DNA of 64,000 nt, taken from assembly GCF_001194135.2 (NCBI RefSeq), contig NC_068983.1:68284900-68348899 (forward strand), written 5' to 3'. Both the position numbers and the translations under genes were made by a program. Position 1 is the first letter of the stretch. Every line of letters begins with the position of its first letter. Positions 1 through 58,200 of the stretch are shown here, piece by piece. The notes below the pieces were generated by a model. That model was not told the origin of the DNA. It ran no database searches and was given only the letters and a program-made list of their open reading frames with translations. The stretch is from Octopus bimaculoides (Eukaryota).

Positions 1-599
1 GGTAGAAATTTCATATAATACACTTAATGTAAACTGTAGGTACACAATAGATGCAGTGGGATCACAGGCAGATTGACAGGGAATTAAGACTTTTCATGTA
101 TAATGGAAGTGCTGAAGTAGTTAGCAGTAAGAACACTCATAAGATGAATTCTCTGAAATACCTGGAAGCCTCTCCACATGTAGTTGACAGTTTCAGCTGT
201 TCTCAAGCACATTTTAGGAAGAAACCCAAACTTCTACTTTATGGACAACTACATTCTGATTTTTAGAAGGTCCTAAATCAAATTATTTCGAGAGAGAATT
301 TATTCATATTAAAGATAGAAAGACATAACATTATTCTGAAAATGGTGAATAGCATTTGTTCTATAAAATAAATATTTGAAAAATTTAATTAACAGATAAC
401 TTATCTTGTGGAACTTCAGAAAATTACTACAAAACTCTTAGGCTCCTGGGAATCCACTTTCAGAAACACTGACCAAAGTGGCCTAATTAGCAGCGGTAGT
501 GAGTGTTATGAAGGCAAAGTAACAACAATAAGGAAAGTTCAGATATCTATTACCTCTGCTGGCAACAAAAGGATTCCTTCTTGGTGTGAAAGGCAGATT

Positions 600-890
600 T
601 TATATTTGCATAGAATGTAATATTGCATGGAAGCAAAATATAGGCATTGAACATGGTGGGTGTGCAAAGGTTGGAAATAAATAAGGTATGTGACCTTAGC
701 ATACATAAATAACCAAGTACAATTCAACTGAGAGGAAAACTGGCTGTAAGAGGAATCAGCTGTAATGTTTGAAAGAAAAAATTGTGGTACAGACATGTGA
801 TGTAAATGACATTTGGGAAAAGATGCGTGAAGAGATCCAAGTGGAAGGAACCTGTGGAAGACAAATGTGAATACTGATTTCAGAAGAGGT
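600..890 (+). mobile_element. Highly decayed RTE LINE C-terminal fragment
   Basis: Translates with stops as LRGKLAVRGISCNV*KKKLWYRHVM, matching the better-preserved RTE C-termini in this window (REKLGTRDIKCSVQERRLHWYGHVM at about 23680). Confidence 0.5.
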
Positions 891-4599: not shown

Positions 4600-4960
4600 A
4601 ACATGCAACCTAAGCCCGTCTAACCAGATATCAATAACCCATCTAACTAGTTCTAAACAATCACGTTGATGGAAGTAAAGGATTACTTCAATGGAGTACC
4701 CAGCCCTATGAGCACCTAAAGATAGCCTTATTTGACTTGCATGTCTATCACATAGGTCCTTCTACAGTGAGCTATATAATAGTAAGAACCTGATACAAGG
4801 ATCTATGAAGCAGTTTAAAGACTATATTTAAGGCACTTTCAAGAAGAATAAGATCAACCCTTCATGACTAAGAGACATTGCTACCTGTGACTCACTTTGG
4901 CAATCTTCCTGCTTGAAGAGGATAAAAGATATTGAGGAGAAATGCACTCAGTGTGAAGCT
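4600..4960 (+). mobile_element. Decayed RTE (BovB-like) C-terminal fragment, probably the same insertion as 3150..3460
   Basis: MKQFKDYIK...NKINPS*LRDIATCDSLWQS resembles the RTE C-terminal K.FKD.LK..L....I.P..W...A.DR..W pattern; many stops. Confidence 0.45.
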
Positions 4961-5252
4961 AAAAAAGATGGGAATACATAGATTTGCATTGGTCTCGCTA
5001 ACTAAAAGTATTTATGCTATTTGCAGTTGAAGCAATTCATTAAGATTTGTTATGCACAGTCATAAAATAGTTCAACAAATAAAGATGGTTATCAATAGTT
5101 TTATGAACAACCATCAACAGCAACAGACACTGGATTACTTTCAGGTTGGCCTGAAAAGTCATAAGTAGCGTCTGTTTTCTGATTGTCCTAGGTATAACAA
5201 ATAATAACTGTTGGGTAGATAAACACTGAACAGATTACTAAATACTTAAGAT

Positions 5253-5554
5253 CAGTAGTTCTCAGTCTTTTTGATTTCAGAGTACGCTGGAAATCAAATG
5301 AACATTTATTATCACACATTGCACAGATGGGGTAAAATATGGTTTAAAACATTTTTTGAATTGGGAAAAAAAATCTGGAAAACAATTGATTGCCTTCTTT
5401 TATTAATCATACACATGTTTTACAAAATTATGAATAATGCATTTTCCAAAAAGTTTAAGCATTACTATGGATATTCTAAAAATCTTAAATATTGGCTTTT
5501 AAATTTGCATTATCCCTGAATAGACTTTGCAGTGCACCATTTAGGAAACTACTG
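5253..5554. mobile_element. Old hAT/Charlie-type MITE
   Basis: Imperfect terminal inverted repeats CAGTAGTTCTCA (5253) and the reverse complement of GGAAACTACTG (ending 5554); the 8-bp flanks are only partly alike (cttaagat / actttgat). Confidence 0.45.
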
Positions 5555-5851: not shown

Positions 5852-7057
5852 TTGGGTCATCCGATAAATAATGCAGTTTTTTCAATTGCATGAACTAAAA
5901 GTCGGAGGTGGATGGGATAAACTGCATCAACCTGCATCAACTTGCTATAAAAGCAGGTAGTAATTTTACCTTGTACTTTTCCTAGTGCAAGTTTTGAAAA
6001 GTAAAGTTCGATTTTAACAGTTATTCTTTCAAAGCTATAATGGAAGTGCCAAAAGAGCATATTCGGTACATTTTGTTTTATGAGTTCAATAAAAGCAACA
6101 ACGCAATGGAAAGTGCAAGGAATATTAATGCAGTATATGGGGATCGGACAATAAGTGTAAGGCAGTGTCAACGGCGGTTCCAGAAATTCTGAGCCTTAAA
6201 CTACAGCCTAGAAGACGAACCTCGTCCTGGAAGATCTGTAGAGCTCAGAGGACGTCATGCAAACTCTGGTGGAACAAAATTCCATTGTAACTATTGAGGA
6301 ACTAACAGAGAAGATTGGATTTGGTCATTCAAACTTTCATCGACACATGCGTGCCATCGGAAAAGTCAAGCAAATTGGGTCAAGGAGTTCCTCACAAACT
6401 TTCCGAGGCTAATCACGCGCAGAGTGAATGTGTGTGCTTTTTTACTGTCACATCTCACCAATGAACTTTTTGGGACCGAAAAGTGACTGGTGACGAGAAA
6501 TGGGTTCTTTATAAAAGTGTCAAGCGTCGAAGACAGTGGGTAGGGAAAGGTGAAACACCGGCACCTCAGGCTAAAGAAGGTCTTCACCCACGTAAGGTGT
6601 TATCTGTTTGTGGGGATATCAAAGGTTTAATCCACTTTGAACAACAACAAAGGAGATCTACTGCGAGCAGCTTGAACGGCTTAATGCAGCGCTGGAAGAA
6701 AAATGACCATCTTTGGTTTCAAAACGAAAGGTGTTCTTCCATCAGGATAATGCTCAGCCATATACAGCGAGGATGACAATCCAAAGGCTAGAGCAGTTAT
6801 CGTTTATTCCGAAGTCTTCAAAATCATTTGGACAGAAAAAATATGAATTCTGTAAACGAGGTCAGAACAGTATTGCAGGAGTATTTTTCGTCACGGACAA
6901 GTGAATTTTGGAAAAGGCTCCTTGCAAGTCGAGCAGATAGCAGAGCGTTGTAGAAAATGAAGGAGAGTTTATTTTAGATTAAAAAGGAACTTTGTTTATC
7001 TTAATTTTGAAAATAAAAGAAGTATTAAAAAAACGCATTATTTATGGGATTACCCAA
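5852..7057 (+). mobile_element. Degenerate mariner (Tc1/mariner DD34D, Hsmar1/SETMAR-like) transposon, 1206 bp
   Basis: TIRs TTGGGTCATCCGATAAATAATGCAGTTTTTT and rc TTGGGTAATCCCATAAATAATGCGTTTTTTT, each flanked by TA. Broken transposase runs from ATG 6040 (MEVPKEHIRYILFYEFNK) through VTGDEKWVLY and FHQDNAQP to VENEGEFILD* (TAA 6980-6982), with stops, frameshifts and a deletion of the YSPDL region. Confidence 0.92.
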
Positions 7058-7599
7058 TACAAGTACATTTGTGAAATTAGGTAAAGCGTTTATTGTAGAA
7101 AATAACGAAATATAAACGAGTGGATCACTGACTACGATATATATTGTACATATTAAAAGTAATCGAATATGTATATTTAGAGTGAGATNNNNNNNNNNNN
7201 NNNNNNNNNNNNNNNNNNNNNNNNNNNNNNNNNNNNNNNNNNNNNNNNNNNNNNNNNNNNNNNNNNNNNNNNNNNNNNNNNNNNNNNNNNNNNNNNNNNN
7301 NNNNNNNNNNNNNNNNNNNNNNNNNNNNNNNNNNNNNNNNNNNNNNNNNNNNNNNNNNNNNNNNNNNNNNNNNNNNNNNNNNNNNNNNNNNNNNNNNNNN
7401 NNNNNNNNNNNNNNNNNNNNNNNNNNNNNNNNNNNNNNNNNNNNNNNNNNNNNNNNNNNNNNNNNNNNNNNNNNNNNNNNNNNNNNNNNNNNNNNNNNNN
7501 NNNNNNNNNNNNNNNNNNNNNNNNNNNNNNNNNNNNNNNNNNNNNNNNNNNNNNNNNNNNNNNNNNNNNNNNNNNNNNNNNNNNNNNNNNNNNNNNNNN

Positions 7600-7656
<57 letters not shown>

Positions 7657-8003
7657 GGTGTGTGTGTGTGTGTGTGTATTAATTTCCGTTTTCAATTTAT
7701 CACATAAAATAGGATTCATGAATATCATACTTGCACTGAACATCAATCTTGGAAAAAATAATATCTATATCTGCTATTCGCTTGGCATTTTTTAAGTATA
7801 CATGTTATTACACAATTCAAAAACATCAGTTTTTCGTTTTCAACCTCCACTTCATTGATGACTGATTTTCTGAGTACTAATAAATAGTCCGGCACCTCTT
7901 TTAGTCCGGACAAATTACGACATGGTACCTGAAATTCCTCCGACCGCCAAACAAGGGTGTCACTGTTTACTTTATCACTGATACTGATCGTTCTCGATTT
8001 TGT

Positions 8004-9677
8004 GTGATATTTTTAAGGATTATTTTACACACATTTAATCTGAACATGGCTTCTAAGAAAGATGCAAGTGTCGGTTGTGGTGTAAAGCGTAAACACCAGT
8101 CGATATCGATAAAAGATAAGGTAGAACTATTGCAAAAACTGGAAAGTGGCGTTTCAATACGAAAACTATGCAATATGTATGGCATCGGTTCATCAACTGT
8201 TTACGATATAAAGAAGCAGAGAGAGAAACTATTTAAATTCTATATAGACAGTGGTTGCAAGAAGCAGATGGGTGTAAGAAAAACTATGAAAGGTGTTAAA
8301 AGTATTGAACATGATCGAGCAATGAAGGATTGGATTCAAAAACGTCGGCTTCATGGAGAGGAATTAACAAGTAATATGTTAATGGAACAGGCTAAGATTT
8401 TCCATCGTCAACTTAATTTAGATTATGAATGTGATTATAGTGAAGGATGGCTTCAAAGGTTTAAGAGACGTCAGGGGATTTCCTTACAGAAATTGTCTAC
8501 GGATAAACGGTTTGCGAAGGAAGGAACTGTCGAGTATATTCAGGAATTTTCTAAATTTATAACTCGCGAGTATCTTACCCCCGAACAAGTGTATAATGCC
8601 GATGAAACGGTATTATATTGGAGATGTATACCAAAAGGTGTTTTGACCAGAGAGGACAAAGAAGGATTTGAACGATCTAGGGAAATAATTACTATTTTAG
8701 GATGCTCAAACGCAGCAGGAACCCACAGATGTAAACCACTAGTTGTAGGGAAAAGTAAATGTTCAAAGGCGTTGAAAGACACAAAAGAATACCCAATAAT
8801 ATACCGTACAAATAAAAACGGCAACATTACCACTGCCATTACTTTAGAATGGTTAGAAAAATATTTTGTGCCAGAAGCCAGAGCCCACTGCACATCCGTA
8901 GGGCTACCAGAAGACTGCAAAATTCTTCTCATTTTGGATAACTGCTCGACTCACCCTAAGGCTGAACTAAGTCAAAAGAATGTTTTTACTTTGTATTTAC
9001 CACCAAACTGTGCATCGCATATCCAGCCACAAGAGCAAGGAATACTTGACTGTCTGAAAACAGAGTACCGCTTACTTTTCATGAGACATATATTAGATGT
9101 AGTAAATACTGGTATGCCTTTAGAGAAATTTATGGCAGAATTTAAAATAGATGACCTGCTTTATTATATTGCTAACGCTTGGCAGAACCTAACAACATCA
9201 ATACTAAAGGCTGGCTGGCATAAGTTATGGCCTAAGTTGATGCATGATAATCCAATTGAAGAAAAGTTTGGATATAACTGGACAGGATTTCATTTACAAA
9301 AGGAAAAAGAAGTTGTCGATGAGTTGCTGGATTATGCTGAGAATATTACTGGAGATGATGCGAAATGCCTAGCAGATAAACTTAATAACGAAAACCTGTC
9401 TGAATGGTTAAGTATCGACGAAATATCACCTATTGTCTATCACAATGCTGGTCCCGATGTTGTAGGTGTTTCTCTGATTTCTGGCAGCAACAGCGGTGTT
9501 GAAGAATGCAAAGATAAAAATGAAATTGATGAAAGATTTAGTATTGAGAAGATAATTGACTTGTTGGCTGAAGTAATTACAGGGTTAGAACAACGTAACT
9601 TTATGAGTAAACAAGAGCTAATGAGTCTATATTTGATATATGAAAAGCTACATGTGGAAAAATCAAAGCAATTGTAA
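8004..9677 (+). CDS. Tigger/pogo transposase-derived protein (CENP-B-type HTH domains plus DDE_1 domain), JRK/JRKL/TIGD-like; first ATG at 8046 gives 543 aa
   Basis: Uninterrupted 557-codon frame. N-terminal KRKHQSISIKDKVELLQKLE...YGIGSSTVYDIKK (psq-type HTH), second HTH ending YSEGWLQRFKRRQGI, catalytic-domain motifs VYNADET, ITILGCSNAAGTH, LLILDNCSTHP, LPPNCASHIQPQEQG. ATG 8046 has A at -3 and G at +4. Confidence 0.9.
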   Translation: MIFLRIILHTFNLNMASKKDASVGCGVKRKHQSISIKDKVELLQKLESGVSIRKLCNMYGIGSSTVYDIKKQREKLFKFYIDSGCKKQMGVRKTMKGVKSIEHDRAMKDWIQKRRLHGEELTSNMLMEQAKIFHRQLNLDYECDYSEGWLQRFKRRQGISLQKLSTDKRFAKEGTVEYIQEFSKFITREYLTPEQVYNADETVLYWRCIPKGVLTREDKEGFERSREIITILGCSNAAGTHRCKPLVVGKSKCSKALKDTKEYPIIYRTNKNGNITTAITLEWLEKYFVPEARAHCTSVGLPEDCKILLILDNCSTHPKAELSQKNVFTLYLPPNCASHIQPQEQGILDCLKTEYRLLFMRHILDVVNTGMPLEKFMAEFKIDDLLYYIANAWQNLTTSILKAGWHKLWPKLMHDNPIEEKFGYNWTGFHLQKEKEVVDELLDYAENITGDDAKCLADKLNNENLSEWLSIDEISPIVYHNAGPDVVGVSLISGSNSGVEECKDKNEIDERFSIEKIIDLLAEVITGLEQRNFMSKQELMSLYLIYEKLHVEKSKQL

Positions 9678-12600
9678 CGAATTTTCTGAAATGAAAAGCC
9701 TAGCCTCAAGCATTATATCGTGTAAGAGACCAACGTACATCACCTTTTACTGAATTGACTCTTATTGAGACAGACCATCACTAGTCGTTTAACGTTCTGC
9801 ACTTATCATTGTATACAAAACAGTAAGACGAAAAGATAAGGCATAATGGCTGTGAATGTTGAACTACTGATGGCGATATGGATAAAGCTTAAATCTTACC
9901 ATTGTGCCGTGCCCCTAAGCAAGGTACATAACTCTGCTTACTTCAGTGCACCTGATTGACATATAAGTTTCACTCCCTACTTCATAGTTGAATGGTAAGT
10001 GCTACAAGTAAAACTATCCCACCCGTGCTCGCACAAGAAAATGGAAGTTGAAATTGTGTAATGTATTTGCATCCAAAAACGTTGTATTGTTTTCTCCTTC
10101 CTCACACCATAAAAGCATGTTGAAACTGTTATCTATAAAAATGCATATTAATAACATAACCCAACTTCTATGAATTTGAGGCTGCATTGAACATTTTTAA
10201 CTTTACGACTTTGGTGTTGGTAGTACTACAAAATACTTTGTAAGTACAGATATTGATAAAACTTTTATTTTTATTCAACTTATTAAATTGTATCATGACT
10301 GTTTAATTATTTGATTAAAGTGTGTAATTTATATACCACTAATGCATTTTGGAAAGAGTTACATATGATTGACTTGATAGTATCAACCTTCCAGATGACT
10401 GTTAATTGCTCTCTAACATACTTAATGCAATAAGCCAAGAAATTTTAAGTAATTAAAATTGCACTCATAGTATTGAGAAAAATATGTACTATTGTTTATT
10501 TCTGGTCAAAAAAGGAGGGGAGGCAACCTAGAATTTAAAATTAATTAAAAATATAATATAATGGAAAGTAAGTTTGTTTTCATAGTACAGTGACAACAGT
10601 TTACTGCACAATGTCCATAACCAAGACAATTCTCTCTGGTTCAGATCATTTATCTGTGAATATGTAACATGAAGTGCAGCTCACCATTATAGCACTGAAC
10701 CACTGTAAGTAGTGTCTTGTTGGTTTGCTTTGCTGAGTTGAAGTTATATTTTCCTGGGATAAGCAATGAGAAACTATTTCAGTGTTTTGTTTCTTGAAAA
10801 TAGTGCAGATTAAAGTTTTAAAAATAGCTTTCTGAAAGGCATATGAGTCTCACAATTCAATATCATTTCCTTTAAAGATCCATGCATTTGGACATATGTT
10901 TAGATAAGTAACAGAAAAAAAGGTAAATCTTTTGTAGTCATTTCTAAGATCTGATTTTGATTCTCAGTTGAAGATAATTCACTTATCCACATAATTTTCT
11001 TCTTGGTCAAGACATGGTTATTGCATAACCTGATTTCTATTCTTTTACACATTTTTGCTATTATACTTTTGTAAAAAAAAAGTAATAAATACCTTTAGTA
11101 TTATATTTATGCTTTAGTATTTGATTAATTAATCTAAATAGCATAAAATATGTGAACTTAATAGTTAACATATTTTTCCTCACAATGGATCACTTCAATG
11201 AGAAAAAGCAACTAGAAGAGCTTTAAAATATTCATGGACATTAGTTATTTTATTGTTCCTAACAAAATATAATGGAAATATATAATTCATTAATAGATAA
11301 GAGAGGAACATAATTTTTAATAACACACACATACACATGCACACACATATGCATATACTTGGGTCTAGTTCATATTGGAAAGTGGTTGGCAAATAGGAAG
11401 GGCATCCAACCAGAAAATCCATGAAATACAGTACACAACAACAAAGATTGGTAGTTTTCTTAGCTGTTTTGTATGTTAGACTACAAAGAACCATGCCAGG
11501 TGGCTAAACACTGTTATCCAAGCCATGCCATCATGGAAAAGCAAACTATATGCAGTAAATAATATTATACAAATTTCAATGTAAATATATATAAGATTTA
11601 AACTTCATGACTCAAAACTTATATTGGATAAATAAATATTACATTTTCTTGTCAACTGACACATTATCCAACAAGCTGTTTTATTCAAGTTGGTAGGGTA
11701 TAATTTGAATGAGATATGGTTGTTATTTCTAGCTGATCTAGCAACCAGTGTGAGGCTCTCTCATTGAGTCAAAAATTGTTGTTATTCAAAATTGGTGGGT
11801 GAGTTATATACTTTTGCAATTTTGAAATTGATGCTGGTGAATGCCTAGATGTACTTGTCCTCAACCTTCTGGAAATTTGCTTTATTGAAGTAGAAGCTGC
11901 TTATTTTGTTGTTCTGTAATTTTCTTGCAAATTACATCATGTGGTTCTGAGTTGCCTGCACACTGGAATTAACAGTTAACATTTTAAATCCCACTATAGT
12001 GATTTGTATTAGCAGTAGCATGCTCCCCGTGATCCCTTGTTGCAATAAACACTGTACCACATACAATTGCTATTTTGTAACACGAGAGACTCATGAGCCA
12101 ATAATGAAGCCTCTATATGGTCATTCACTCTGCCTGAACCAGTTCTCATATAAACATTCTGTACATCTAATTTCTGCAGACATACTCAGAATTCAACCAC
12201 TCAAATGCACTCAAACGCACTCAAACTCCAGTGTTATTAAGTTAATTACCATAATGATAAGCAAATGCATCAGCAACTTTTTCTCTAATGAGGTAACTTT
12301 CCACATGGTTGAGAACAAATATAATCAGATACCCACTGGCAGTAATTTAGAAAAGAACAGAAAAGTATATAATTCACCACTACAAATAGCAAAAAAATCT
12401 TTGAGTCAATGTGAGAGCCTCTACATGGTTGTTAGGCTAGCTAGAAATAGCTGGTGTGTCACTCACAAATTACCCTATCATTTAATAAAAAATGACACAT
12501 TAAATAATGTGGTTCAGGGTCCTCTGCACATAGGAAAAAGGTAGTGTGGACACGAACAGAATACCTTTGATTATAGGGCTGACCTGGAGCTAGGCAGCAA

Positions 12601-13446: not shown

Positions 13447-13699
13447 TGGTGGCACGTAAAAAACACCATTTTGAGTGTGGCTGTTGCCAGTACCGTGTGA
13501 CTGGCCCTCGTGCTGATGGCACGTAAAAGCACCCACTACACTCTCGGAGTGGTTGGCGTTAGGAAGGGCATCTAGCTGTAGAAACCCTGCCAAATCAGAT
13601 TGGAGCCTGGTGCAGCCTTCTGGCTTGCCAGTCCTCAGTCAAATCATCCGCTTTCCATGCTAGCATGGAAAGCGAACGTTAAATGATGATGATGATGAT
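13447..13699 (+). mobile_element. RTE LINE 3' UTR copy ending in (GAT)n
   Basis: ggtggcacgtaaaa...gcacccactacactc...ggaagggcatc...catgctagcatggaaagc..gttaaatgatgatgat, shared with 18959..19310 and 20824..21047. Confidence 0.85.
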
Positions 13700-14865: not shown

Positions 14866-14893
<28 letters not shown>

Positions 14894-14899
<6 letters not shown>

Positions 14900-17800
14900 C
14901 ATCGTTTAACGTCCATTTTCCATGCTAGCATGGGATGGATGGTTCGACTGGCGTCTCCGAAGCCAGGAGGCTGCACCAGGCTCCAGTCTGATCTGGCAGT
15001 GTTTCTACAGCTGGATGTCCTTCCTCACACTAACCACTCCGTGAGTGTAGTGGGTGCTTTTTGCATGCCACTGGCACAGGAGCCAGAGGAGGCTGGCAAC
15101 GGCCATGATTAGTAGGTGCTTTTTATGTGCCACTGGCACAGAAGCTGATCAAGGTGACGCTAGCATCGGCCATGTTCAGATGGCATGTTCGGATGATACC
15201 AGTGGGTATCACAACTACAATTTCCATTTGATCTTCATTTTGATGTTAATGTTGATGTACTTGACTCAATAGGTCTCCTCAAGCACAGCAGGTCACCCAT
15301 GATCCAAGGTACTTTTGAATGGGCTGGGGCTGGTTATGTGAAACTGGTGTAGGATACAGTCGTGAACTCACTTTATTTGTTGGGTCTTCTCAATCACAGC
15401 ATATCTCCAGAGGTCTCGGTCTTTCGTCATTGCCACTGTGAAACCCAACATTCAAAGTTGCTTTACCACCTCATTCCATGTCTTCCTGGATCTACCTCTA
15501 CCCTGGATTCCTTCAACTGTTTGGGAGTGGCACTTCTTCACACAGCTCTCCTCATCCATCCGTAGTACATGACCATACCAGCGCAAACATCTCCCTTGCA
15601 TGCCACATCTGACACTTCTTCTGTCCAACATTTCTCTCAAGGCGCTTACACTCTGTCATGTGTGCACACTGACATTACACATCCAGCAGATCATGCTAGC
15701 TTCCTTTCTTTCAAGCCTACGCATGTCTTCCACAGTCATGGCCCATGTTTCACTGCTGTGAAGCATGGCAGTTCGCACACATGCATCGTACAATCTACCT
15801 TTCACTTTGAGCGAGAGGCCCTTTGTCACCAGTAGGGGTAGAAGCTTTCTAAACTTTGCCCAGGCTATTCTTATTCTAGTGGTAACACTCTCTGAGCATC
15901 CACCCCTACCACAGACTTGGTCACATAGGNNNNNNNNNNTTCTAAACTTTGCCCAGGCTATTCTTATTCTAGTGGTAACACTCTCTGAGCATCCACCCCT
16001 ACCACAGACTTGGTCACATAGGTAGCGGAAGCTATCAACTACTTCTAGTTTTTCCCCCTGGGGTGTGATGGAATCTGTTTTCTGAGCATCTGTGGTGTTT
16101 ATTACCCCTGTGCATCTGCCGCACACGAAAGCTATCGTCCCGGTTAATCTTCCTTTGATGTTGCTGCACCTTACACTGGGTACATCTTATGGAGTTTCTA
16201 CCTACACCTTTTCTACAGATCTAACAGGGCCTCCTACCTGAGGGTGTGTGTGATGTGTTTGCCTTCCTACTTACTAGAACATTGGTCTTTGCTACATTGA
16301 CTCTAAGGCCTTTTGATTCTAAACCTTGCTTTCACACCTGAAATTTCTTCTCTAGTTCTGGTGGGGATTCTTCTATGAGGGCCAGGTCATCAGCATAGAG
16401 GAATTCCCAGGGGCAACCTCTGTTATTGCCTGGTGGATTATGATGAATAAAAGGGGACTGAGGGCTGATCCTTGGTGGACCCCTACTTCTACCCGGAATT
16501 CTTCACTATACTCATTGCCAATCCTAACCTTACTAATGGCCTCTCTGTATAGGGCCTGTACAGCCCTTATTAACCAGTCGTCAATCCCCAGTTTCCACAT
16601 CGCCCACCAGATAAGCAATCGGGAGACCCTGTCAAAGGCTTTCTCCAAGTCCACAAAAGCTAAGTATAGGGGGTTATCTTTAGCTAGATATTTCTCCTGC
16701 AGTTGTTGAACCAGGAATATAGCGTCAGTAGTGCTTCTACCTGGCACAAAGCCCAACTGCATCTCATCTAAGCAGACACTCTCCCTAATGAGATGGGCTA
16801 TGACCCTCTCCGTAACCTTCATCATCTGATCCAGCAGTTTGATACCCCTGTAGTTATCTCTATCTAGAGCATCACCTTTACCCTTGTAGCAGTTGACCAT
16901 GGTGCTGCTATGCCAGTCATTGGGTATGACTCCATCATGAACTACCTGGTGACTACACCACCATAGCCCACACCACCAGATGTTTTAAGCATCTCAGCAG
17001 TGATTCCTGATGGGCTGGGGTCTTTTCCTGGCTTCATACCCTTAATTGCTTTATCTACCAGGGAGCTGTCTATTTGGATAGCTGGTCCCACTACTGGGTC
17101 AACATTTGGCAGGCTCTCCTCCTCCCATTCATTCTCCACGTTCAGCAGTCTTTCATAATGGCTCCTCCAAGCCTCTTTCTTTCCTGAATCATTAAAAGTA
17201 AGTGCACCATCATCCATGCAGACACATTTCTCTCCTGTGACATCACAATTTTCTCTCACACACTGTCTTGCAATCCGGAATACTTCAGTTCTTTGGTCCT
17301 CATGTCGCTGGACATGGGCAAATTTCTTCTTTTCTGCTTTGCCCTTGGCTATGTATACCTGCTGCCCAGCCACCCTTTTGGCTACCTGGTACAGTTCCCT
17401 GCTTGTGGAGGCGCAATGGCCCAGTGGTTAGGGCAGCGGACTCACGGTCATAGGATCGCGGTTTCGATTCCCAGACTGGGCGTTGTGAGTGTTTATTGAG
17501 CAAAAACATCTAAAGCTCCACGAGGCTCCAGCAGGGGATGGTGGCGAACCCTGTTGTACTCTTTCACCACAACTTTCTCTCACTCTTACTTCCTGTTTCT
17601 GTTGTGCATGTAATTCAAAGGGTCAACCTTGTCACACTGTGTCACGCTTAATATCACCAAGAACTACGTTAAGGGTACACGTGTCTGTGGAGTGTTCAGC
17701 CACTTGCATGTTAATTTCACGAGCAGGCTGTTCTGTTGATCGAATCAACTGGAACTCTCGACGTCGTAAGCGACGGAGTGCCAACAACAGTTCCCTGCTA

Positions 17801-18958: not shown

Positions 18959-19366
18959 ACATTGGGCCTCACCGAGGCAATGACTACTGACCGAGACCTT
19001 TGGAAATGTGCTGTGCGTGAGAAGACCCGGCAAGCCAAGTAAGATCGTTGCCAGTGCTCCTGGACTGGCTCTTGTGCGGGTGGCACATAAAAGACACCAT
19101 TTCGAGCGTGGCCGTTTTTGTGCGGGTAACACGTAAAAGCACCCACTACACTCTCTGAGTGGTTGGCGTTAGGAAGGGCATCCAGCTGTAGAAACTCTGC
19201 CAAATTAGATTGGAGCCTGGTGTTGCCATCTGGTCTGCCAGTCCTCAGTCAAATCGTCCAACCCATGCTAGCATGGAAAGCGGACGTTAAACGATGATGA
19301 TGATGATGATATATATATATCATGCTAGCATGGAAAGCGGACGTTAAATGATGATAATGATGATGG
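18959..19366 (+). mobile_element. RTE LINE 3' end (last codons plus 3' UTR) with duplicated terminal tail
   Basis: TLGLTEAMTTDRDLWKCAVREKTRQAK* then the 3' UTR to (GAT)n at 19310; the terminal catgctagcatggaaagcggacgttaa..gatgat is repeated at 19321-19366. The 5' part is lost in a gap. Confidence 0.88.
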
Positions 19367-19565: not shown

Positions 19566-21043
19566 ATGTTGGTCAATGAGGAAACTTGGGATAGAAGAAT
19601 GGTTAGTGAGAGCTGTGCGAGCCATGTACAGAGATGCTGCCAGTAAGGTGAGGGTTGGAAATGAGTACAGCAATGAATTCCGGGTAGAGGTAGGGGTCCA
19701 CCAAGGTTCCGTCCTCAGCCCCCTATTATTTACCATAGTCCTCCAGGCAATCACAGAGGAGTTCAAGACAGGTTGCCCCTGGGAGCTCCTCTATGCTGAT
19801 GACCTTGCCCTAATTGCGGAGTCACTATCAGAACTAGAGGAGAAGTTTCAGGTGTGGAAGCAAGGTCTAGAATTGAAGGGCCTTAGAGTCAACCTAGCTA
19901 AAACCAAAATCCTAATAAGTAGGAAGGTAGATAAAACACAANNNNNNNNNNNNNNNNNNNNNNNNNNNNNNNNNNNNNNNNNNNNNNNNNNNNNNNNNNN
20001 NNNNNNNNNNNNNNNNNNNNNNNNNNNNNNNNNNNNNNNNNNNNNNNNNNNNNNNNNNNNNNNNNNNNNNNNNNNNNNNNNNNNNNNNNNNNNNNNNNNN
20101 NNNNNNNNNNNNNNNNNNNNNNNNNNNNNNNNNNNNNNNNNNNNNNNNNNNNNNNNNNNNNNNNNNNNNNNNNNNNNNNNNNNNNNNNNNNNNNNNNNNN
20201 NNNNNNNNNNNNNNNNNNNNNNNNNNNNNNNNNNNNNNNNNNNNNNNNNNNNNNNNNNNNNNNNNNNNNNNNNNNNNNNNNNNNNNNNNNNNNNNNNNNN
20301 NNNNNNNNNNNNNNNNNNNNNNNNNNNNNNNNNNNNNNNNNNNNNNNNNNNNNNNNNNNNNNNNNNNNNNNNNNNNNNNNNNNNNNNNNNNNNNNNNNNN
20401 NNNNNNNNNNNNNNNNNNNNNNNNNNNNNNNNNNNNNNNNNNNNNNNNNNNNNNNNNNNNNNNNNNNNNNNNNNNNNNNNNNNNNNNNNNNNNNNNNNNN
20501 NNNNNNNNNNNNNNNNNNNNNNNNNNNNNNNNNNNNNNNNNNNNNNNNNNNNNNNNNNNNNNNNNNNNNNNNNNNNNNNNNNNNNNNNNNNNNNNNNNNN
20601 NNNNNNNNNNNNNNNNNNNNNNNNNNNNNNNNNNNNNNNNNNNNNNNNNNNNNNNNNNNNNNNNNNNNNNNNNNNNNNNNNNNNNNNNNNNNNNNNNNNN
20701 NNNNNNNNNNNNNNNNNNNNNNNNNNNNNNNNNNNNNNNNNNNNNNNNNNNNNNNNNNNNNNNNNNNNNNNNNNNNNNNNNNNNNNNNNNNNNNNNNNNN
20801 NNNNNNNNNNNNNNNNNNNNNNNGGCACATAAAAGACACCATTTCGAGCGTGGCCGTTTTCGTGCGGGTGACACGTAAAAGCACCCACTACACTCTCTGA
20901 GTGGTTGGCGTTAGGAAGGGCATCCAGCTGTAGAAACTCTGCCAAATCGGACTGGAGCCTGGTGTTGCCATCCGGTTTCACCAGTCCTCAGTCAAATCGT
21001 CCAACCCATGCTAGCATGGAAAGCGGACGTTAAACGATGATGA

Positions 21044-21047
<4 letters not shown>
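19566..21047 (+). mobile_element. 5'-truncated RTE LINE, apparently young (RT core intact; middle hidden in gap 19942..20823)
   Basis: Open frame WSMRKLGIEEWLVRAV...GVHQGSVLSPLLF...ELLYADDL...KGLRVNLAKTK up to the gap; 3' UTR and (GAT)n tail at 20824-21047. Confidence 0.88.
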
Positions 21048-21077
<30 letters not shown>

Positions 21078-51052: not shown

Positions 51053-54000
51053 TATATTATTGCTTCTAGAAAGATGAAAGGTACTGTACTGTTCTACAAA
51101 TTCATCTGCTTCTTTTACGTAATATAACTATGAATTTTAAAACATTAAAGACATTCAACAATTTGGGATGTAGTTGCTTCCAACCACAGTCCAACATCTG
51201 GCTCACAGGCATAGCCTTCTCTTGCTCTCTTTGCCTTTTCTACAGCAGCTATATATACTATGTAGACCTCTGCTCATTAGAGCTGGCTGGTTTTGTGCCA
51301 TCTCCACACAGGCACTCCCCACTAATTTACTTGTCTCCCTTGTTGTCATCTATGATGTGTCCATCCCACTCTAACTACCTCCAGTATTTTCTCCTCAGAA
51401 CATTGAACTCTCCTAAAGTTCCCTCCTTGCCCATGTGTAACCCTCAACCATTGGTTTGTTCAAAAGAACATGAACTGTGCCATTTTCACCAATCTTGGTG
51501 GGCGTACAAAGGTCATGGACATACTTCCTTTTTGCAGACCAATGAAATAACAAAACATTGATTTCTAAGTATTTAATTTGAAGTGGAAAGCATAATTGAC
51601 TGAATCAACTTAAAGCATTTATTATTTTAGCAATCTAGTAGGAATGAATGGAAGGTGAAGTCTGCTCCCAACTCCATGCAAGAGTAGAATTGAGAAACAA
51701 GAAAGTGAGTAAGATTCTGCAAAACATTCTGGTTTAGCTCTTTATATTGTCTGATCCAAGCTAAAAATATATTAGGCATTGTAGTTTTTCAAGCTACTGG
51801 CAAACAAAACTATTTCCAAAAGTAAGGAAAAAAATGAAGCTTCTGTCCAGACAAACCAATGAATGGATTACTGAAGCACAAAAGAAAGATGGAAGAGATT
51901 AGCTAGTAGGTTACTATATTGTTACCAATAATTGTTTAAAATGATTTACCACCATCACCACCACCACCACCACCTCCATGGAGTGAAAGATCAAGAATGG
52001 GGTTCACAACTCATGGAAAAAAACAAAAACAAAAACAACTTAAACACTTGAAATGGACAAACTGGAACAAGCTGTAAATTTGAAGGCATAAACTGTCATC
52101 ATACGAAGCAGGAAAATGTTTGAACCAATTGAAGCATTACATCACAATATTACCATCACTACCATATCTTAAATATGCTACCACATCACTTTACTGGTGT
52201 CACTACATCAATCTACATTATACTTCTTTACTTCTACTGGATTTGTAGTCACATGCCATCACATTTCTTTACACAACAATATTATCTCAACATTATTATA
52301 TCCTATAAGACACTTTACAAAAACACATTAAAATCATAATATATGTATGTATATGTATATATTATAACTGAAAGGCTTATTTCCAGTGCTCAGAGTTGCT
52401 TGTTTCTGTTATAATGTATTAAAGAATACTCTGAGTCCTGTAATTTATCGCTTTTGGTGAATCAACAGATTTTACACATACAGATACACACAAACATAAC
52501 AAAACAAATCAGCAAAGTAGAATGAATGACTAATGAAAACTTGCTTAAGAAATAAGACACTCAAGTTCCCCAACAAAATTAGCTAAATTAACCACCACTA
52601 CCAATGTCACTTACCAACCCATAACCTTTTGAGCATGTAACATGCTGAACAGTGAAAGGCTAGCAGTGCACAGTGAATATTAACTCAAAAAAATGGAGAC
52701 AAACTAGACTAGAAACATCAATTTTGCTGTCTGAGATTTATGGATTAGGTCACTGCTATATCTCTCTCAAGTACAGCAAGAATTGTTTGATAAAACCACT
52801 ACTATCACTGCATTTGAATAGACAAAAACCCATTTCTGTAAGGGTGTCATTTATTAAATGGATCTACTAGTGAATTATCTTACCAATTCTGGAATGACAA
52901 AAAGAATGGATTCCAGAAAATTCTGAACTGCTTAGTGCACTAGGTAGGATAGCATAAAGCATCTAAAATGGTTCACTGTCACTCATCACTGCAACAATAA
53001 CAACAAAATCAAAATAATTTACTCAAAAGTAAACTTGTGAATTTTTATCTTACTTTATGTCAGTGACCCAATTCAAAGATATTCAACAAAAGCTGAAAGA
53101 TAGAACCAGAAAGTGGTTCTAGAACTGTAATTATAGATAACTACAATGTTTTTTTGCATCAAATAATGAATAAGGCGATGCAAGTATTAAATGTGAAACT
53201 TTATATGAAGAGTTTAAGATAAAGACTGTGAAGACCATTATAGCCAATAATGAAGGCAGTTTCCTGAACCTTATTCACCTACTTCAAACCCGAGCAAACC
53301 CTCAATTACTCCAATGAGTTATCTAAGTTGGCCATTAGTTTTCAATTAATGACTGAGATGTAGTTATCTAGGTACTTAAAATTCTGATTCCTATCAGAAT
53401 AAAAAGACTGTTTTGTGCACCTAATTTTGACAAAATATAGCAAAGTCCCTGCAATGTTAAACAACTGTGAAATCAATGGTGTTATATTGAGTCTTTTACA
53501 TAGAGTGCGAATAGGTTTTCAAAGAATGACCTCATTTGACAATTTACTAATATCATGATCAAATATATAAGCAATTAATGATTAAAGAGGTAATTTTCAT
53601 TAAATGTTTGAAACCAGAACTTTCAAATTATCATAAGCCACATGACTTTCATTGATTTGAACTTGGTGTTTATAACTCAGTCTATATTCATAGACTTTCT
53701 CTCCATCTTTGCAATGGTTGACTAATAAATGTTATTGTAAGATATTGTATTTATATTAGAATCTTTATGGCTGACCCTAAATATACCCCCTGATAGTTGT
53801 TTAACATTACTTCAAGGAAATTACCATATTTTATTTATATATATAAATCATGATTCTTCAACAGCTGCAAAATATAAGAAGCCAGTGTTTAATAAACAAA
53901 TGTTATATACTTAGAATGTTGAGTAATAACTGAGGTGTACATACCTTTTATTCTGTCGTGGTTAAGTAAACTAACCAATTTTTCTTGCAGTCGTTCATTC

Positions 54001-56739: not shown

Positions 56740-58200
56740 ATAGGCCAATCATCATCAACATCTTTGTTTAACATCCACCTTCCATGCTGGCATAGGTGGA
56801 ACAATTTGACAGGAGCTGGTCAGGCAGAATATATATTATATGTGCCAGTTCCCATTGCTACCCCAATTTTAACAATGCTAGCACAGATGATCAGATTTTC
56901 TCCAGTGTCATTATCATCATCGTTTAACGTCCGCTTTCCATGCTAGCATGGGTTGGACGATTTGACTGAGGACTGGTGAAACCGGATGGCAACACCAGGC
57001 TCCAATCTGATTTGGCAGAGTTTCTACAGCTGGATGCCCTTCCTAACGCCAACCACTCAGAGAGTGTAGTGGGTGCTTTTACGTGTCACCCGCACGAAGG
57101 CCAGTCAGGCGGTACTGGCAATGGCCACGCTCAAAATGGTGTATTTTACGTGCCACCTGCACAGGAGCCAGTCCAGCGGCACTAGCAACGATCTCGCTCA
57201 AAAATCCTTACACATGTCATGGGCACAAGTGCCAGAAAGGCGACGCTGGGCACAGGTGCTATCCCGATTTCGCTTTCGCTTGCCCCAATAAGTCTTCGCA
57301 AGCTGATGCCCATCTTAATTTCCCTCCATATCACCATCCGACCCGGTCCAGTCAACCATCAAGAGATATGTTCTCCTGCTGGTAATGTGTCACATCCACT
57401 ATGTCTAACAAATTGCCGTGGTCCTTTGTCATCATCTTCATGTGATGCAATACTTTGAGATCACTCTTCATCCCAATTCTTCCTTTGTCTCACTCTTCTA
57501 CAGGTTCCATACTTGACTCTTCTTTGTACAGCTGTCATCTTTCATACACATCACATGCTCATATCAATACAGTCTCCTCTCTTGAGAGCTACATCTGATT
57601 TCTTCTTTATCCAGGTTTTCTCTCAGCTCATTTATACTCCATCATCCATGTATACTAACATTATACCTCCAGCAGAGCACTTTCACACCATTTCTTTTTG
57701 GTATTTTCAAATCCTCTGTATTCAATGTCCATGTCTTGCTACACTGCATCATCACATTTTGTACCCAAGTTTCATAAAATCTACTCTTCTCTCTAAAGGA
57801 GAAGTCCTTTGTTGTCATCATCGTTCATCGTTTAACGTCCGCTTTCCATGCTGGCATGGGTTGGACGATTTGACTGAGGACTGGTGAAACCGGATGGCAA
57901 CACCAGGCTCCAATCTAATTTGGCAGAGTTTCTACAGCTGGATGCCCTTCCTAACGCCAACCACTCCGAGAGTGTAGTGGGTGCTTTTACGTGTCACCTG
58001 CACGAGGGCCAGTCAGGCGGTACTGGTAACGGCCACGCTCAAAATGGTGTCTTTTATGTGCCACCCGCACAAGAGCCAGTCCAGCGGCACTGGCAACGAT
58101 CTCACTCATAATAATTCCCTGAACTTCCAATCTGTTTTTACTCTAGCTACTACATTTTCAGAAAACTTACCCTTACTGCTACTGAGCTTATTTACCTGAC
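56740..58200 (-). mobile_element. Old RTE LINE copy carrying two younger RTE 3'-UTR insertions (56913..57205 and 57815..58106)
   Basis: Decayed tail at 56740-56900 and decayed ORF C-terminus at 57470-57810 continuing after 58107; two well-preserved 3'-UTR units beginning (CAT)n-cgtttaacgtccgctttccatgc lie inside it. Confidence 0.75.

What the first reader, a model, noticed from the sequence alone, without database searches (positions are those of the whole stretch)
8004..9677. Candidate domesticated Tigger/pogo transposase gene with D,D,E instead of D,D,D and no TIRs
Seen: a 1.67-kb stop-free frame in a window where nearly every other element is broken. Both HTH domains are intact; catalytic D1 (GAT 8601) and D2 (GAT 8937) are kept but the third position reads QPQEQG (GAG 9033, 31 residues after D2) where pogo/Tigger enzymes have QP.DQG. 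There is a strong Kozak context at 8046, a plausible splice acceptor (tttttaag, 8017) just upstream, and no TIR/TA-TSD pair was found. Known: CENP-B, JRK, JRKL and TIGD genes arose by repeated domestication of pogo transposases as single-coding-exon DNA-binding proteins. Inference: an independent cephalopod domestication, possibly a lineage-specific chromatin or transcription regulator.
Basis: partly seen in the sequence, partly recalled or inferred. Interest (0 to 1): 0.75.

Follow-up and report, generated by a model that had tools for sequence, protein, structure and literature searches.

The report
Immobilised Tigger transposase gene in Octopus
This is an intact, single-copy gene descended from a Tigger "jumping gene" that has sat at the same chromosomal spot in three Octopus species for about 34 million years and is being kept open by selection, but it is already annotated and listed in the literature, so it is a solid but ordinary example of a known phenomenon.

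Summary
Window 8046-9677 (+) encodes a 543-aa protein with CENP-B_N, HTH_Tnp_Tc5 and DDE_1 domains.

The window is Octopus bimaculoides chromosome CM046603.1. The gene is already RefSeq LOC106872090 / XP_014774435, and is listed as a transposon-derived transcription factor ("Ob_72090") in Mukherjee & Moroz 2023.

O. vulgaris and O. sinensis carry a 95%-identical orthologue at the colinear site. These lineages split about 34 Mya.

Selection is moderate. dN/dS is 0.36-0.54. The CDS has one in-frame indel where about 12 are expected from the flanks (p=6e-5).

No TIR/TA pair exists. A 29-nt relic of the Tigger left subterminal region survives at 7888-7916. It matches, 26/29, a TIR-bearing frog element whose transposase is the closest relative (55% identity).

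The octopus protein branches with these elements, not with mammalian JRK. E at the third catalytic site is unique among 44 relatives, but Gao et al. 2020 already report "DD32D/E" for JRK.

Not supported: the splice acceptor at 8017, and "cephalopod-wide" distribution (shown only for the genus Octopus).

Verdict: a probable genus-level domestication, and a new member of a known kind.

The parts
7738..8045 (+). 5' UTR as given by the RefSeq cDNA model for LOC106872090. It is colinear with the genome (no intron) and contains uATGs at 7802, 7858 and 7922.
   Evidence: The cDNA printed in PMC10027918 Suppl. Table1.xlsx starts TGAACATCAATCTTGG..., which is window ~7738, and runs uninterrupted into ATGGCTTC (genome sequence).
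7861..7916 (+). Relic of the Tigger left-end subterminal region. The core at 7888-7916, TCCGGCACCTCTTTTAGTCCGGACAAATT, holds two TCCGG(A/C)-type sites 17 nt apart. Weaker similarity (ACTGATTTTC) lies at 7861-7870. The outermost ~10 nt of a TIR and a TA duplication are not recognisable.
   Evidence: The core matches, 26/29, positions 34-62 of the TIR-bearing frog element L004:2551-5669. blastn-short gives E=1e-4, and 0 of 3000 shuffles reach the score (observed 43, maximum 32). The stretch is 100% identical in the three Octopus species. There is no second copy anywhere in the window.
8046..9677 (+). Single-exon CDS of 543 aa plus the stop codon: a Tigger-type transposase-derived protein (XP_014774435).
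   Evidence: The AlphaFold model has mean pLDDT 78 and matches Mos1, SETMAR and Sleeping Beauty catalytic domains and the CENP-B DNA-binding domain.
8085..8240 (+). CENP-B_N helix-turn-helix domain (aa 14-65).
   Evidence: Pfam PF04218, E=1.9e-7. PDB 1HLV (CENP-B) aligns to aa 16-143. Foldseek gives a TM-score of 0.71, normalised to the target.
8313..8489 (+). HTH_Tnp_Tc5 second DNA-binding domain (aa 90-148).
   Evidence: Pfam PF03221, E=5.8e-11.
8688..9218 (+). DDE_1 catalytic (RNase H-like) domain as matched by Pfam (aa 215-391). The predicted fold starts earlier, at strand 182-191, which carries D186.
   Evidence: Pfam PF03184, E=7.9e-38, full profile length.
8601..8603 (+). Catalytic D1 (D186, GAT) in the motif YNADET.
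8937..8939 (+). Catalytic D2 (D298, GAT) in the motif LILDNC.
9033..9035 (+). Third catalytic position, E330 (GAG), in IQPQEQGIL. It has 31 residues between it and D2, which would presumably be written 'DD32E' in the style Gao et al. use (e.g. 'DD32D/E' for JRK). O. vulgaris and O. sinensis share it.
9678..10400 (+). Downstream stretch with low between-species divergence (2.5%, against a 5.5% noncoding mean). It may be the 3' UTR; ATTAAA signals lie at 10282 and 10314. It shows no similarity to the right end of the frog element.
   Evidence: Its extent as a UTR was not verified.

Best explanation
A Tigger-family (pogo superfamily) DNA transposon inserted here before O. bimaculoides split from the O. 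vulgaris/O. sinensis lineage, about 34 Mya. It then lost usable ends: the tip of the left TIR is unrecognisable and no right end is detectable. Its transposase gene has since been retained as a single-copy, single-exon host gene, LOC106872090, annotated 'jerky protein homolog-like'.

Shown: the domain architecture, orthology and synteny within the genus Octopus, constraint on the ORF, absence of a TIR pair, the 5' subterminal relic, and independence from vertebrate JRK.

Inferred: the protein works mainly through its two intact helix-turn-helix domains as a sequence-specific DNA-binding protein. This is the usual fate of CENP-B, JRK and TIGD-type domestications. It may recognise TCCGG(A/C)-type sites such as the two preserved in its own 5' UTR, which would allow autoregulation.

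Transposition of its own locus is no longer possible for lack of ends. The D330E change, together with changes at 13 other family-conserved positions (for example P240S and T323A), suggests that the transposase-specific chemistry is altered or weakened. That has not been tested.

Constraint is moderate and looks weaker in the C-terminal quarter and in the O. bimaculoides lineage. This is best described as a young, genus-level domestication candidate rather than an old, strongly conserved gene.
For: Architecture and fold.

Identity of locus and annotation.

Orthologue: P0079 is 95% identical, with flanks colinear over window 7601-11186 and beyond.

Selection, substitutions: 21 synonymous against 31 nonsynonymous changes, NG86 dN/dS 0.36, binomial p=7e-4. 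Allowing for transition/transversion bias, P(syn>=21)=0.022, P(no stop)=0.10 and the joint probability is 0.0036.

Selection, indels and divergence: CDS divergence is 3.2% against 5.5% in 3956 nt of noncoding DNA. The CDS has 1 in-frame indel where 12.4 are expected, p=5.6e-5. dN/dS is 0.22 in the DNA-binding domains and 0.32 in the DDE region.

Copy number: there is no other protein above 55% identity in a 5.8-billion-protein collection that includes three annotated Octopus proteomes. The gene is single-copy in the window.

Transposon origin: the closest relative lies in a frog element with 28-nt TIRs flanked by TA. The 26/29 subterminal match is described.

Phylogeny.

Divergence date of ~34 Mya: PMC10700109.

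Precedents: JRK 'DD32D/E' with Ka/Ks 0.21 (PMC7386202).
Against: Only two effectively independent lineages were compared, because O. vulgaris and O. sinensis differ by just 2 synonymous changes. This leaves the dN/dS estimate noisy.

dN/dS of 0.36-0.54 is higher than for vertebrate pogo domestications (0.05-0.21). It is about 0.87 for aa 401-544.

The octopus protein departs from the family consensus at 14 of 85 highly conserved columns. The frog element and most mammalian JRK proteins depart at 0-3.

Of 16 polarisable differences, 12 are derived in O. bimaculoides, including changes at five positions invariant in all ten relatives compared. This could mean relaxed constraint in the species the window comes from.

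The downstream flank 9678-10400 is as conserved as the CDS, so part of the low CDS divergence could reflect a locally low mutation rate.

I examined no expression data directly. No orthologue was seen outside the genus Octopus. DNA binding and any biological role are untested.
Confidence: 0.62

Rival explanations
1. The locus is a neutral relic: an immobilised Tigger copy of no use to the host, whose ORF has simply not yet been broken. The apparent constraint would reflect a locally low mutation rate and small-sample noise.
For: The divergence is shallow, with only 52 substitutions. P(no stop | 52 random substitutions) is about 0.10, which is not extreme. The adjacent noncoding 9678-10400 is as conserved as the CDS (2.5% against 3.2%). 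dN/dS is about 0.87 in the C-terminal quarter. The protein deviates at 14 of 85 conserved family positions, and there is an excess of derived changes in O. bimaculoides. No orthologue was found beyond one genus.
Against: The CDS has one in-frame indel where about 12 are expected, and even the well-conserved downstream 723 nt has 5 indels (p=5.6e-5). There is an excess of synonymous changes, p=0.022 after correcting for transition/transversion bias. dN/dS is 0.22-0.32 in the DNA-binding and DDE parts. The ORF is intact in both lineages after about 68 My of summed branch length.
Confidence: 0.2
2. The locus is a still-autonomous, very low-copy Tigger transposon whose ends were simply not recognised. 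Selection would then act on transposition ability rather than on a host function.
For: All three transposase domains are full-length and D1 and D2 are intact. A glutamate at the third site is used by Tc1-type DD34E enzymes (my own knowledge). Two subterminal TCCGG sites are preserved and 100% conserved between species. The closest relative is an element with perfect TIRs.
Against: The same copy sits at the colinear site in species separated by about 34 My. There is no right-end counterpart and no TIR tip within the window. No second copy appears among the annotated proteins of three Octopus genomes. In the mariner Mos1 transposase the equivalent D-to-E change abolishes activity (my recollection of Lohe et al. 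1997, not checked here).
Confidence: 0.04
3. The gene is domesticated, and its retained D,D,E centre is still catalytic. The host would then use it as a nuclease or recombinase acting in trans on relic Tigger ends or MITEs, as SETMAR and PGBD5 retain DNA-cleavage activity, rather than only as a DNA-binding factor.
For: The full DDE_1 domain has a confidently predicted RNase H-like fold. dN/dS in the DDE region (0.32) is nearly as low as in the DNA-binding domains. D-to-E conserves the carboxylate. The E is fixed in both lineages.
Against: There are several substitutions at conserved catalytic-domain positions: P240S, T323A, K209E and others. Many vertebrate pogo-derived genes keep the DDE fold without a working triad (PMC7386202). 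There is no biochemical evidence.
Confidence: 0.12

Closest known systems
Tigger-family transposons of the pogo superfamily. The nearest is the element in Pseudophryne corroboree chromosome CM051808.1 (L004:2551-5669), which encodes P0002.
   Same: The two proteins are 55% identical over the full length and share the CENP-B_N + HTH_Tnp_Tc5 + DDE_1 order, the MASK... start and the YNADET / LDNC / IQPQxQGIL motifs. They share the left subterminal sequence TCCGG(A/C)ACCTCTTTTA(A/G)TCCGGACAA. The octopus protein falls in the same NJ clade.
   Different: The frog element has 28-nt TIRs (CAGGTACACC...) abutting TA and a D at the third catalytic site. Its transposase belongs to a 90%-identity cluster with 9 member sequences. 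The octopus locus has no TIR pair, has E330, appears as one copy, is fixed at an orthologous site, and lacks the C-terminal tail of roughly 70 aa that the frog protein has.
Mammalian JRK (jerky), a Tigger-derived domesticated gene.
   Same: It has the same three-domain, single-coding-exon architecture, a similar length (about 530-570 aa) and is 41-42% identical. Its triad is recorded as 'DD32D/E', so E occurs at the same position in some JRK proteins, and it has a moderate Ka/Ks of 0.21 (PMC7386202).
   Different: The two are not orthologous. Mammalian JRK forms a separate clade, while the octopus protein branches with frog and coelacanth elements. JRK is conserved across Mammalia, whereas the octopus gene is so far seen in one genus. 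JRK deviates at 0-3 of about 82 family-conserved columns against 14 of 85 for the octopus protein.
CENP-B, the TIGD genes and the CENP-B-like proteins of fission yeast, which are recurrent pogo domestications.
   Same: These are pogo transposases retained as DNA-binding host proteins without TIRs. The octopus N-terminus aligns to the CENP-B DNA-binding domain structure 1HLV.
   Different: They derive from different pogo lineages (pogoR for CENP-B, TIGD3, TIGD4 and TIGD6). CENP-B has lost a recognisable triad, whereas the octopus protein keeps D, D and an acidic third residue.
The 'Ob_72090' entry in Mukherjee & Moroz 2023 (PMC10027918), which lists octopus TE-derived HTH-Psq/CENPB transcription factors.
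   Same: It is the same protein: XP_014774435 / LOC106872090, with an identical sequence. It is already interpreted there as a lineage-specific co-option of a pogo-type transposase.
   Different: As far as I read the paper, it lists the gene in bulk and gives no locus-level synteny, no orthologue dN/dS, no note of the D-to-E change and no mention of transposon-end remnants. Another octopus entry in the same list, Ob_67769, is only 26% identical, so it belongs to a different pogo lineage.

Membership tests
pogo superfamily / Tigger-family transposase (protein) | [quoted passage not shown] | tested here: met
   All three Pfam domains score above their gathering thresholds and DDE_1 is matched over its full length. 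The predicted fold matches Mos1, SETMAR, Sleeping Beauty and CENP-B.
pogo superfamily / Tigger-family transposase (protein) | DDxD catalytic triad, with the third residue an aspartate about 30-36 residues after D2 | tested here: not met
   D186 and D298 are present, but the third position is E330, with 31 residues in between. Of the 43 relatives, 37 have D there.
Autonomous Tigger transposon (element) | Terminal inverted repeats flanked by a TA target-site duplication | tested here: not met
   There is no credible inverted-repeat pair around the ORF. Only a left subterminal relic survives. No inverted or second copy of it occurs in the 64-kb window. By comparison, the frog relative has 28-nt TIRs next to TA.
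Autonomous Tigger transposon (element) | Multiple dispersed, closely similar copies in the genome | tested here: inconclusive
   There is one copy in the window and one 90%-identity protein cluster across the three annotated Octopus proteomes. No octopus genome could be searched at the DNA level, so decayed copies and MITEs are not excluded.
Domesticated transposase gene | Orthologues at the same (syntenic) locus in different species | tested here: met
   The O. vulgaris and O. sinensis loci are colinear with the window on both sides of the ORF. This is shown only within the genus Octopus.
Domesticated transposase gene | Purifying selection on the coding sequence between orthologues | tested here: met
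   dN/dS is 0.36 (p=7e-4, or 0.022 after correcting for transition/transversion bias). There is 1 in-frame indel against 12.4 expected (p=5.6e-5), and no stop codons. The strength is moderate and the C-terminal quarter is close to neutral.
Domesticated transposase gene | Transcription and a host function | not testable with these tools
   The only evidence is gene models: a RefSeq cDNA with a 5' UTR and independent annotations in O. vulgaris and O. sinensis. No RNA-seq or functional data were available.
Domesticated transposase gene | Phyletic persistence over a deep clade (the 'cephalopod domestication' claim) | tested here: inconclusive
   No hit between 55% and 95% identity was found. The collection's coverage of other cephalopod genomes is unknown. 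Even the Octopus genes have no Logan-derived cluster members, so absence of hits is weak evidence.
Vertebrate JRK/JRKL orthologue group | Branches inside the JRK/JRKL clade | tested here: not met
   In an NJ tree of 44 proteins, the octopus protein branches with frog, coelacanth and unnamed elements, and mammalian JRK forms a separate clade. The database name 'jerky protein homolog' reflects similarity only.

The most novel reading that the evidence does not exclude
The gene would be a young (at least 34 My), Octopus-restricted domestication caught at an intermediate stage. In this reading the transposase still recognises its own ancestral subterminal sites: two TCCGG(A/C) boxes kept 100% identical in the 5' UTR of its own gene. 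It would use them for autoregulation, or it would act through a still-functional D,D,E centre on dispersed relic Tigger ends in the octopus genome, making it a trans-acting nuclease or recombinase rather than a passive DNA-binding factor.
Probability: 0.1. Interest if true: 0.6.

Novelty: new member of a known kind. Interest (0 to 1): 0.3.

Why it matters
Pogo/Tigger transposases have been co-opted repeatedly: CENP-B, JRK, JRKL, TIGD2-7, POGZ and POGK. Most well-analysed cases are in vertebrates, fission yeast and some insects (PMC7386202, PMC4231638).

A molluscan case with locus-level evidence would extend that pattern to cephalopods. The evidence here is synteny, constraint on the ORF, loss of the element's ends, and a still-recognisable binding-site relic next to the gene. 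Cephalopod genomes are rich in transposons and in lineage-specific transcription-factor expansions.

Because the case is young, it keeps features that older domestications have lost, namely subterminal sites and a nearly intact catalytic triad. That makes it a workable system for asking what changes first when a transposase becomes a host gene.

The gene is already annotated and catalogued, and the kind of event is well known. The gain is incremental.

Tried and rejected
1. TIR search around the ORF. Only 70-82% chance-level inverted pairs turned up. The pair 7754-7773 / 10247-10266 has the CTG/CAG ends facing inwards, which is the wrong orientation. Rejected.

2. The heptamer GGTACCTG at 7925-7932. 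It is the reverse complement of the frog TIR tip CAGGTAC. I considered it as an inverted terminus. A 7-mer is about chance level, and the non-palindromic spacer ACCTCTTTTA fixes the relic in left-end, direct orientation. Rejected.

3. A right-end relic. Local alignment of both frog ends against 9678-12000, plus motif scans of the whole window, found nothing above chance.

4. TIRs in two further relatives, L006 and L007. None was found, so no family TIR consensus could be built. The Logan contig L005 is too short to hold the ends.

5. The 106-nt block of perfect three-species identity at 7879-7984 as evidence of constraint. Given about 250 differences in about 4 kb, a run of this length is not significant after allowing for multiple starts (my estimate, p about 0.25). 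I report it but do not use it as evidence.

6. Literature search by accession (LOC106872090, XP_014774435, XP_029633793). No main-text hits. The gene was found only by peptide search in a supplement.

7. An O. vulgaris transcript of this gene in the same supplement. Not found, though the stored files are truncated.

8. P0004 (coelacanth) could not be located on a contig.

9. I did not use the large representative-protein search or the remaining homology searches. Near-orthologues would already have appeared, and unnamed hits could not answer the question about other cephalopods.
Full report
**What is there.** The ORF listing finds a 557-codon open frame at 8004..9677 (+). It is much the longest real ORF in the window; the other long "ORFs" run through N gaps. 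The first ATG is at 8046, in the context aacATGg, and gives 543 aa.

Pfam finds CENP-B_N (aa 14-65), HTH_Tnp_Tc5 (aa 90-148) and a full-length DDE_1 (aa 215-391, E=7.9e-38). The N-terminus aligns to the CENP-B DNA-binding domain structure 1HLV.

An AlphaFold model built on 44 homologues has mean pLDDT 78. Its best PDB fold matches are Mos1 mariner transposase, the CENP-B DNA-binding domain, the SETMAR transposase domain and the Sleeping Beauty catalytic domain.

**Whose genome, and is the gene known?** The exact protein lies on Octopus bimaculoides chromosome CM046603.1 (assembly GCA_001194135.2). Its 90%-identity cluster has one other member, P0079, annotated "jerky protein homolog(-like)" in O. 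vulgaris (CAI9719723.1) and O. sinensis (XP_029633793.1).

A peptide search of the supplements of Mukherjee & Moroz 2023 (PMC10027918) finds the identical protein as "Ob_72090". There it is XP_014774435, LOC106872090, class HTH-PSQ, within a catalogue of transposon-derived transcription factors. The gene is therefore annotated and already flagged as TE-derived, although only in a bulk list.

The RefSeq cDNA printed in that supplement begins at about window 7738 and is colinear with the genome through the ATG. The putative acceptor at 8017 is therefore not used in that model.

**Orthology and synteny.** The O. vulgaris (L002) and O. sinensis (L003) loci align colinearly with the window on both sides of the ORF. 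Window 1-666, 6237-7176, 7601-11186 and further blocks all align. The proteins are 95% identical and share E330. According to Destanović et al. 2023, citing Jiang et al. [quoted passage not shown] The insertion is at least that old.

**Selection: substitutions.** O. bimaculoides and O. vulgaris differ in the CDS by 52 substitutions (3.2%) and one 3-nt in-frame indel. NG86 counts 21 synonymous and 31 nonsynonymous changes, giving dS 0.067, dN 0.024 and dN/dS 0.36, with binomial p=7e-4.

I also simulated substitutions using the transition:transversion ratio seen in the flanks (143:74). The chance of at least 21 synonymous changes among 52 is 0.022. The chance of no stop codon is 0.10, and the joint chance is 0.0036. 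The equivalent omega is about 0.54.

**Selection: indels.** The strongest signal comes from indels. In 3956 aligned noncoding bases there are 30 indel events (7.6 per kb) and 5.5% substitutions. That predicts 12.4 indels in the CDS, where one in-frame indel is seen (p=5.6e-5).

**Selection: by region and lineage.** dN/dS is 0.22 for aa 1-150, 0.32 for aa 151-400 and 0.87 for aa 401-544.

Several caveats apply. Only two effectively independent lineages exist. The downstream 9678-10400 is as conserved as the CDS (2.5%). The octopus protein departs from the family consensus at 14 of 85 highly conserved columns, whereas the frog element and most JRK proteins depart at 0-3. Of 16 polarisable differences, 12 are derived in O. 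bimaculoides. This may indicate weaker constraint in that lineage.

**Transposon origin and what is left of the ends.** Among 5.8 billion proteins, nothing lies between 95% and 55% identity. The best outside hit is P0002 from the frog Pseudophryne corroboree, at 55%. Next come unnamed Logan and ENA proteins and coelacanth and Pyxicephalus proteins at 50-54%. Mammalian JRK is at 41-42%.

The frog gene sits in a clean Tigger element, L004:2551-5669. It has 28-nt TIRs, CAGGTACACCACCGATTTTCCGGCAACC, abutting TA repeats, and several TCCGG(A/C) boxes near both ends.

Around the octopus ORF there is no such inverted-repeat pair. However, 7888-7916 (TCCGGCACCTCTTTTAGTCCGGACAAATT) matches positions 34-62 of the frog left end at 26 of 29 positions, in the same orientation and with the same 17-nt box spacing. 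The local score is 43, and 0 of 3000 shuffles reach it (maximum 32). blastn-short gives E=1e-4.

Weaker similarity continues to about 7861. The outermost 10 nt and a TA are not recognisable. No second or inverted copy of the motif occurs in the window, and nothing downstream resembles the frog right end.

The locus is therefore a one-ended relic: the left subterminal DNA is retained, and the termini needed for mobility are gone. The relic is identical in all three Octopus species. A 106-nt identity run is not in itself significant, by my estimate.

**Phylogeny and the D,D,E.** In an NJ tree of 44 relatives, the octopus protein sits on a long branch. It falls inside the clade holding the frog element, P0003, and the coelacanth, Pyxicephalus and ENA proteins. 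Mammalian JRK is a separate clade. The event is therefore independent of JRK, and the database name reflects similarity only.

E at the third catalytic position is unique among the close relatives. One distant, clearly degenerate protein, P0047, also has E.

It is not unprecedented, however. Gao et al. 2020 tabulate the JRK triad as "DD32D/E", and report N or S at that site in other TIGD genes (PMC7386202). From my own knowledge (not checked here), Tc1-type enzymes use DD34E. The D-to-E swap inactivates mariner Mos1. So the functional effect in a pogo enzyme cannot be predicted from sequence.

**Mechanism proposed.**

Shown: an immobilised, single-copy Tigger transposase gene has been kept open by selection in the genus Octopus.

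Inferred: it acts as a sequence-specific DNA-binding protein through its two helix-turn-helix domains, which are its best-constrained part. It may recognise TCCGG(A/C)-type boxes like those preserved in its own 5' UTR. Catalysis is altered or dispensable.

The rivals are a not-yet-broken neutral relic (about 0.2), a cryptically active low-copy transposon (about 0.04) and a domesticate that is still catalytic (about 0.12).

**What could not be done.** No cephalopod genome could be searched at the DNA level. Three things therefore remain untested: copy number including decayed copies and MITEs, presence or absence in other octopods and decapodiforms, and the empty-site boundaries. Absence of other cephalopod hits is weak evidence. 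Even the Octopus genes have no read-assembly (Logan) members in their cluster. No expression data were examined.

**Verdict.** The locus is a probable domestication, but it is demonstrated only at genus level, it is under moderate rather than strong constraint, the proposed splice site is not supported, and the gene is already annotated and catalogued. It is a new, better-documented member of a well-known kind. Interest: 0.3.

Noticed in passing
window 7851-8600 compared with 8851-10600: CpG observed/expected is about 1.0-1.3 over the 5' UTR relic and the first ~550 nt of the CDS. It falls to 0-0.5 further 3' and downstream. This could mark a germline-unmethylated, promoter-like 5' region. The windows are small and no statistics were done.
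   Followed up: no
window 7189-7677; L002 ~9315-9600: An assembly gap (411 N) followed by (AT)n and (GT)n microsatellites lies about 180 nt upstream of the expected left end of the element. [quoted passage not shown] The RefSeq 5' UTR model starts just after it.
   Followed up: partly
window 13448-13699, 14877-15172, 19046-19320, 20824-21061, 56908-57190, 57815-58098: A dispersed repeat of roughly 250-300 nt occurs at least six times in the window, on both strands. It is 78-86% identical to several sites in the O. vulgaris and O. sinensis loci. It is probably one of the abundant octopus SINE-like families.
   Followed up: no
window 16373-16900 (-): A 175-aa ORF matches reverse transcriptase RVT_1 (E=1.5e-17). 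The neighbouring ORFs at 15656-17373 have no Pfam hit, so this looks like a fragmented retroelement. The 14.9-17.4 kb region appears duplicated in O. vulgaris and O. sinensis, where it matches two blocks at 72-78% and 89-90% identity.
   Followed up: no
window 53889-54842 (-): A 317-aa ATG-initiated ORF with no Pfam match. It is the second-longest gap-free ORF in the window. Its identity is unknown.
   Followed up: no
L004:2640-3000 and 4860-5390 (frog element): The frog Tigger element carries about three tandem ~120-nt repeats between its left end and the ATG. It also has a long array of short GGGCTGTGGAAGGTTTAGAGTT-like repeats after the stop codon. These explain its 3.1-kb size.
   Followed up: no
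one search hits P0057, P0059, P0066, P0067, P0069 (decapod crustaceans): Lobster and shrimp proteins fuse a BTB/POZ domain (PF00651) to CENP-B_N/HTH_Tnp_Tc5 domains. Those domains are 53-57% identical to the octopus DNA-binding region, and the proteins lack the DDE domain. They look like separate domestications of the same Tigger lineage, as BTB fusion proteins, in crustaceans.
   Followed up: no
L002/L003 1-5343: In O. vulgaris and O. sinensis the nearest called upstream gene is on the same strand and ends about 4.6 kb before the ORF. Its 332-aa product carries a prenyltransferase repeat (PF00432). No gene is called within 10 kb downstream.
   Followed up: no
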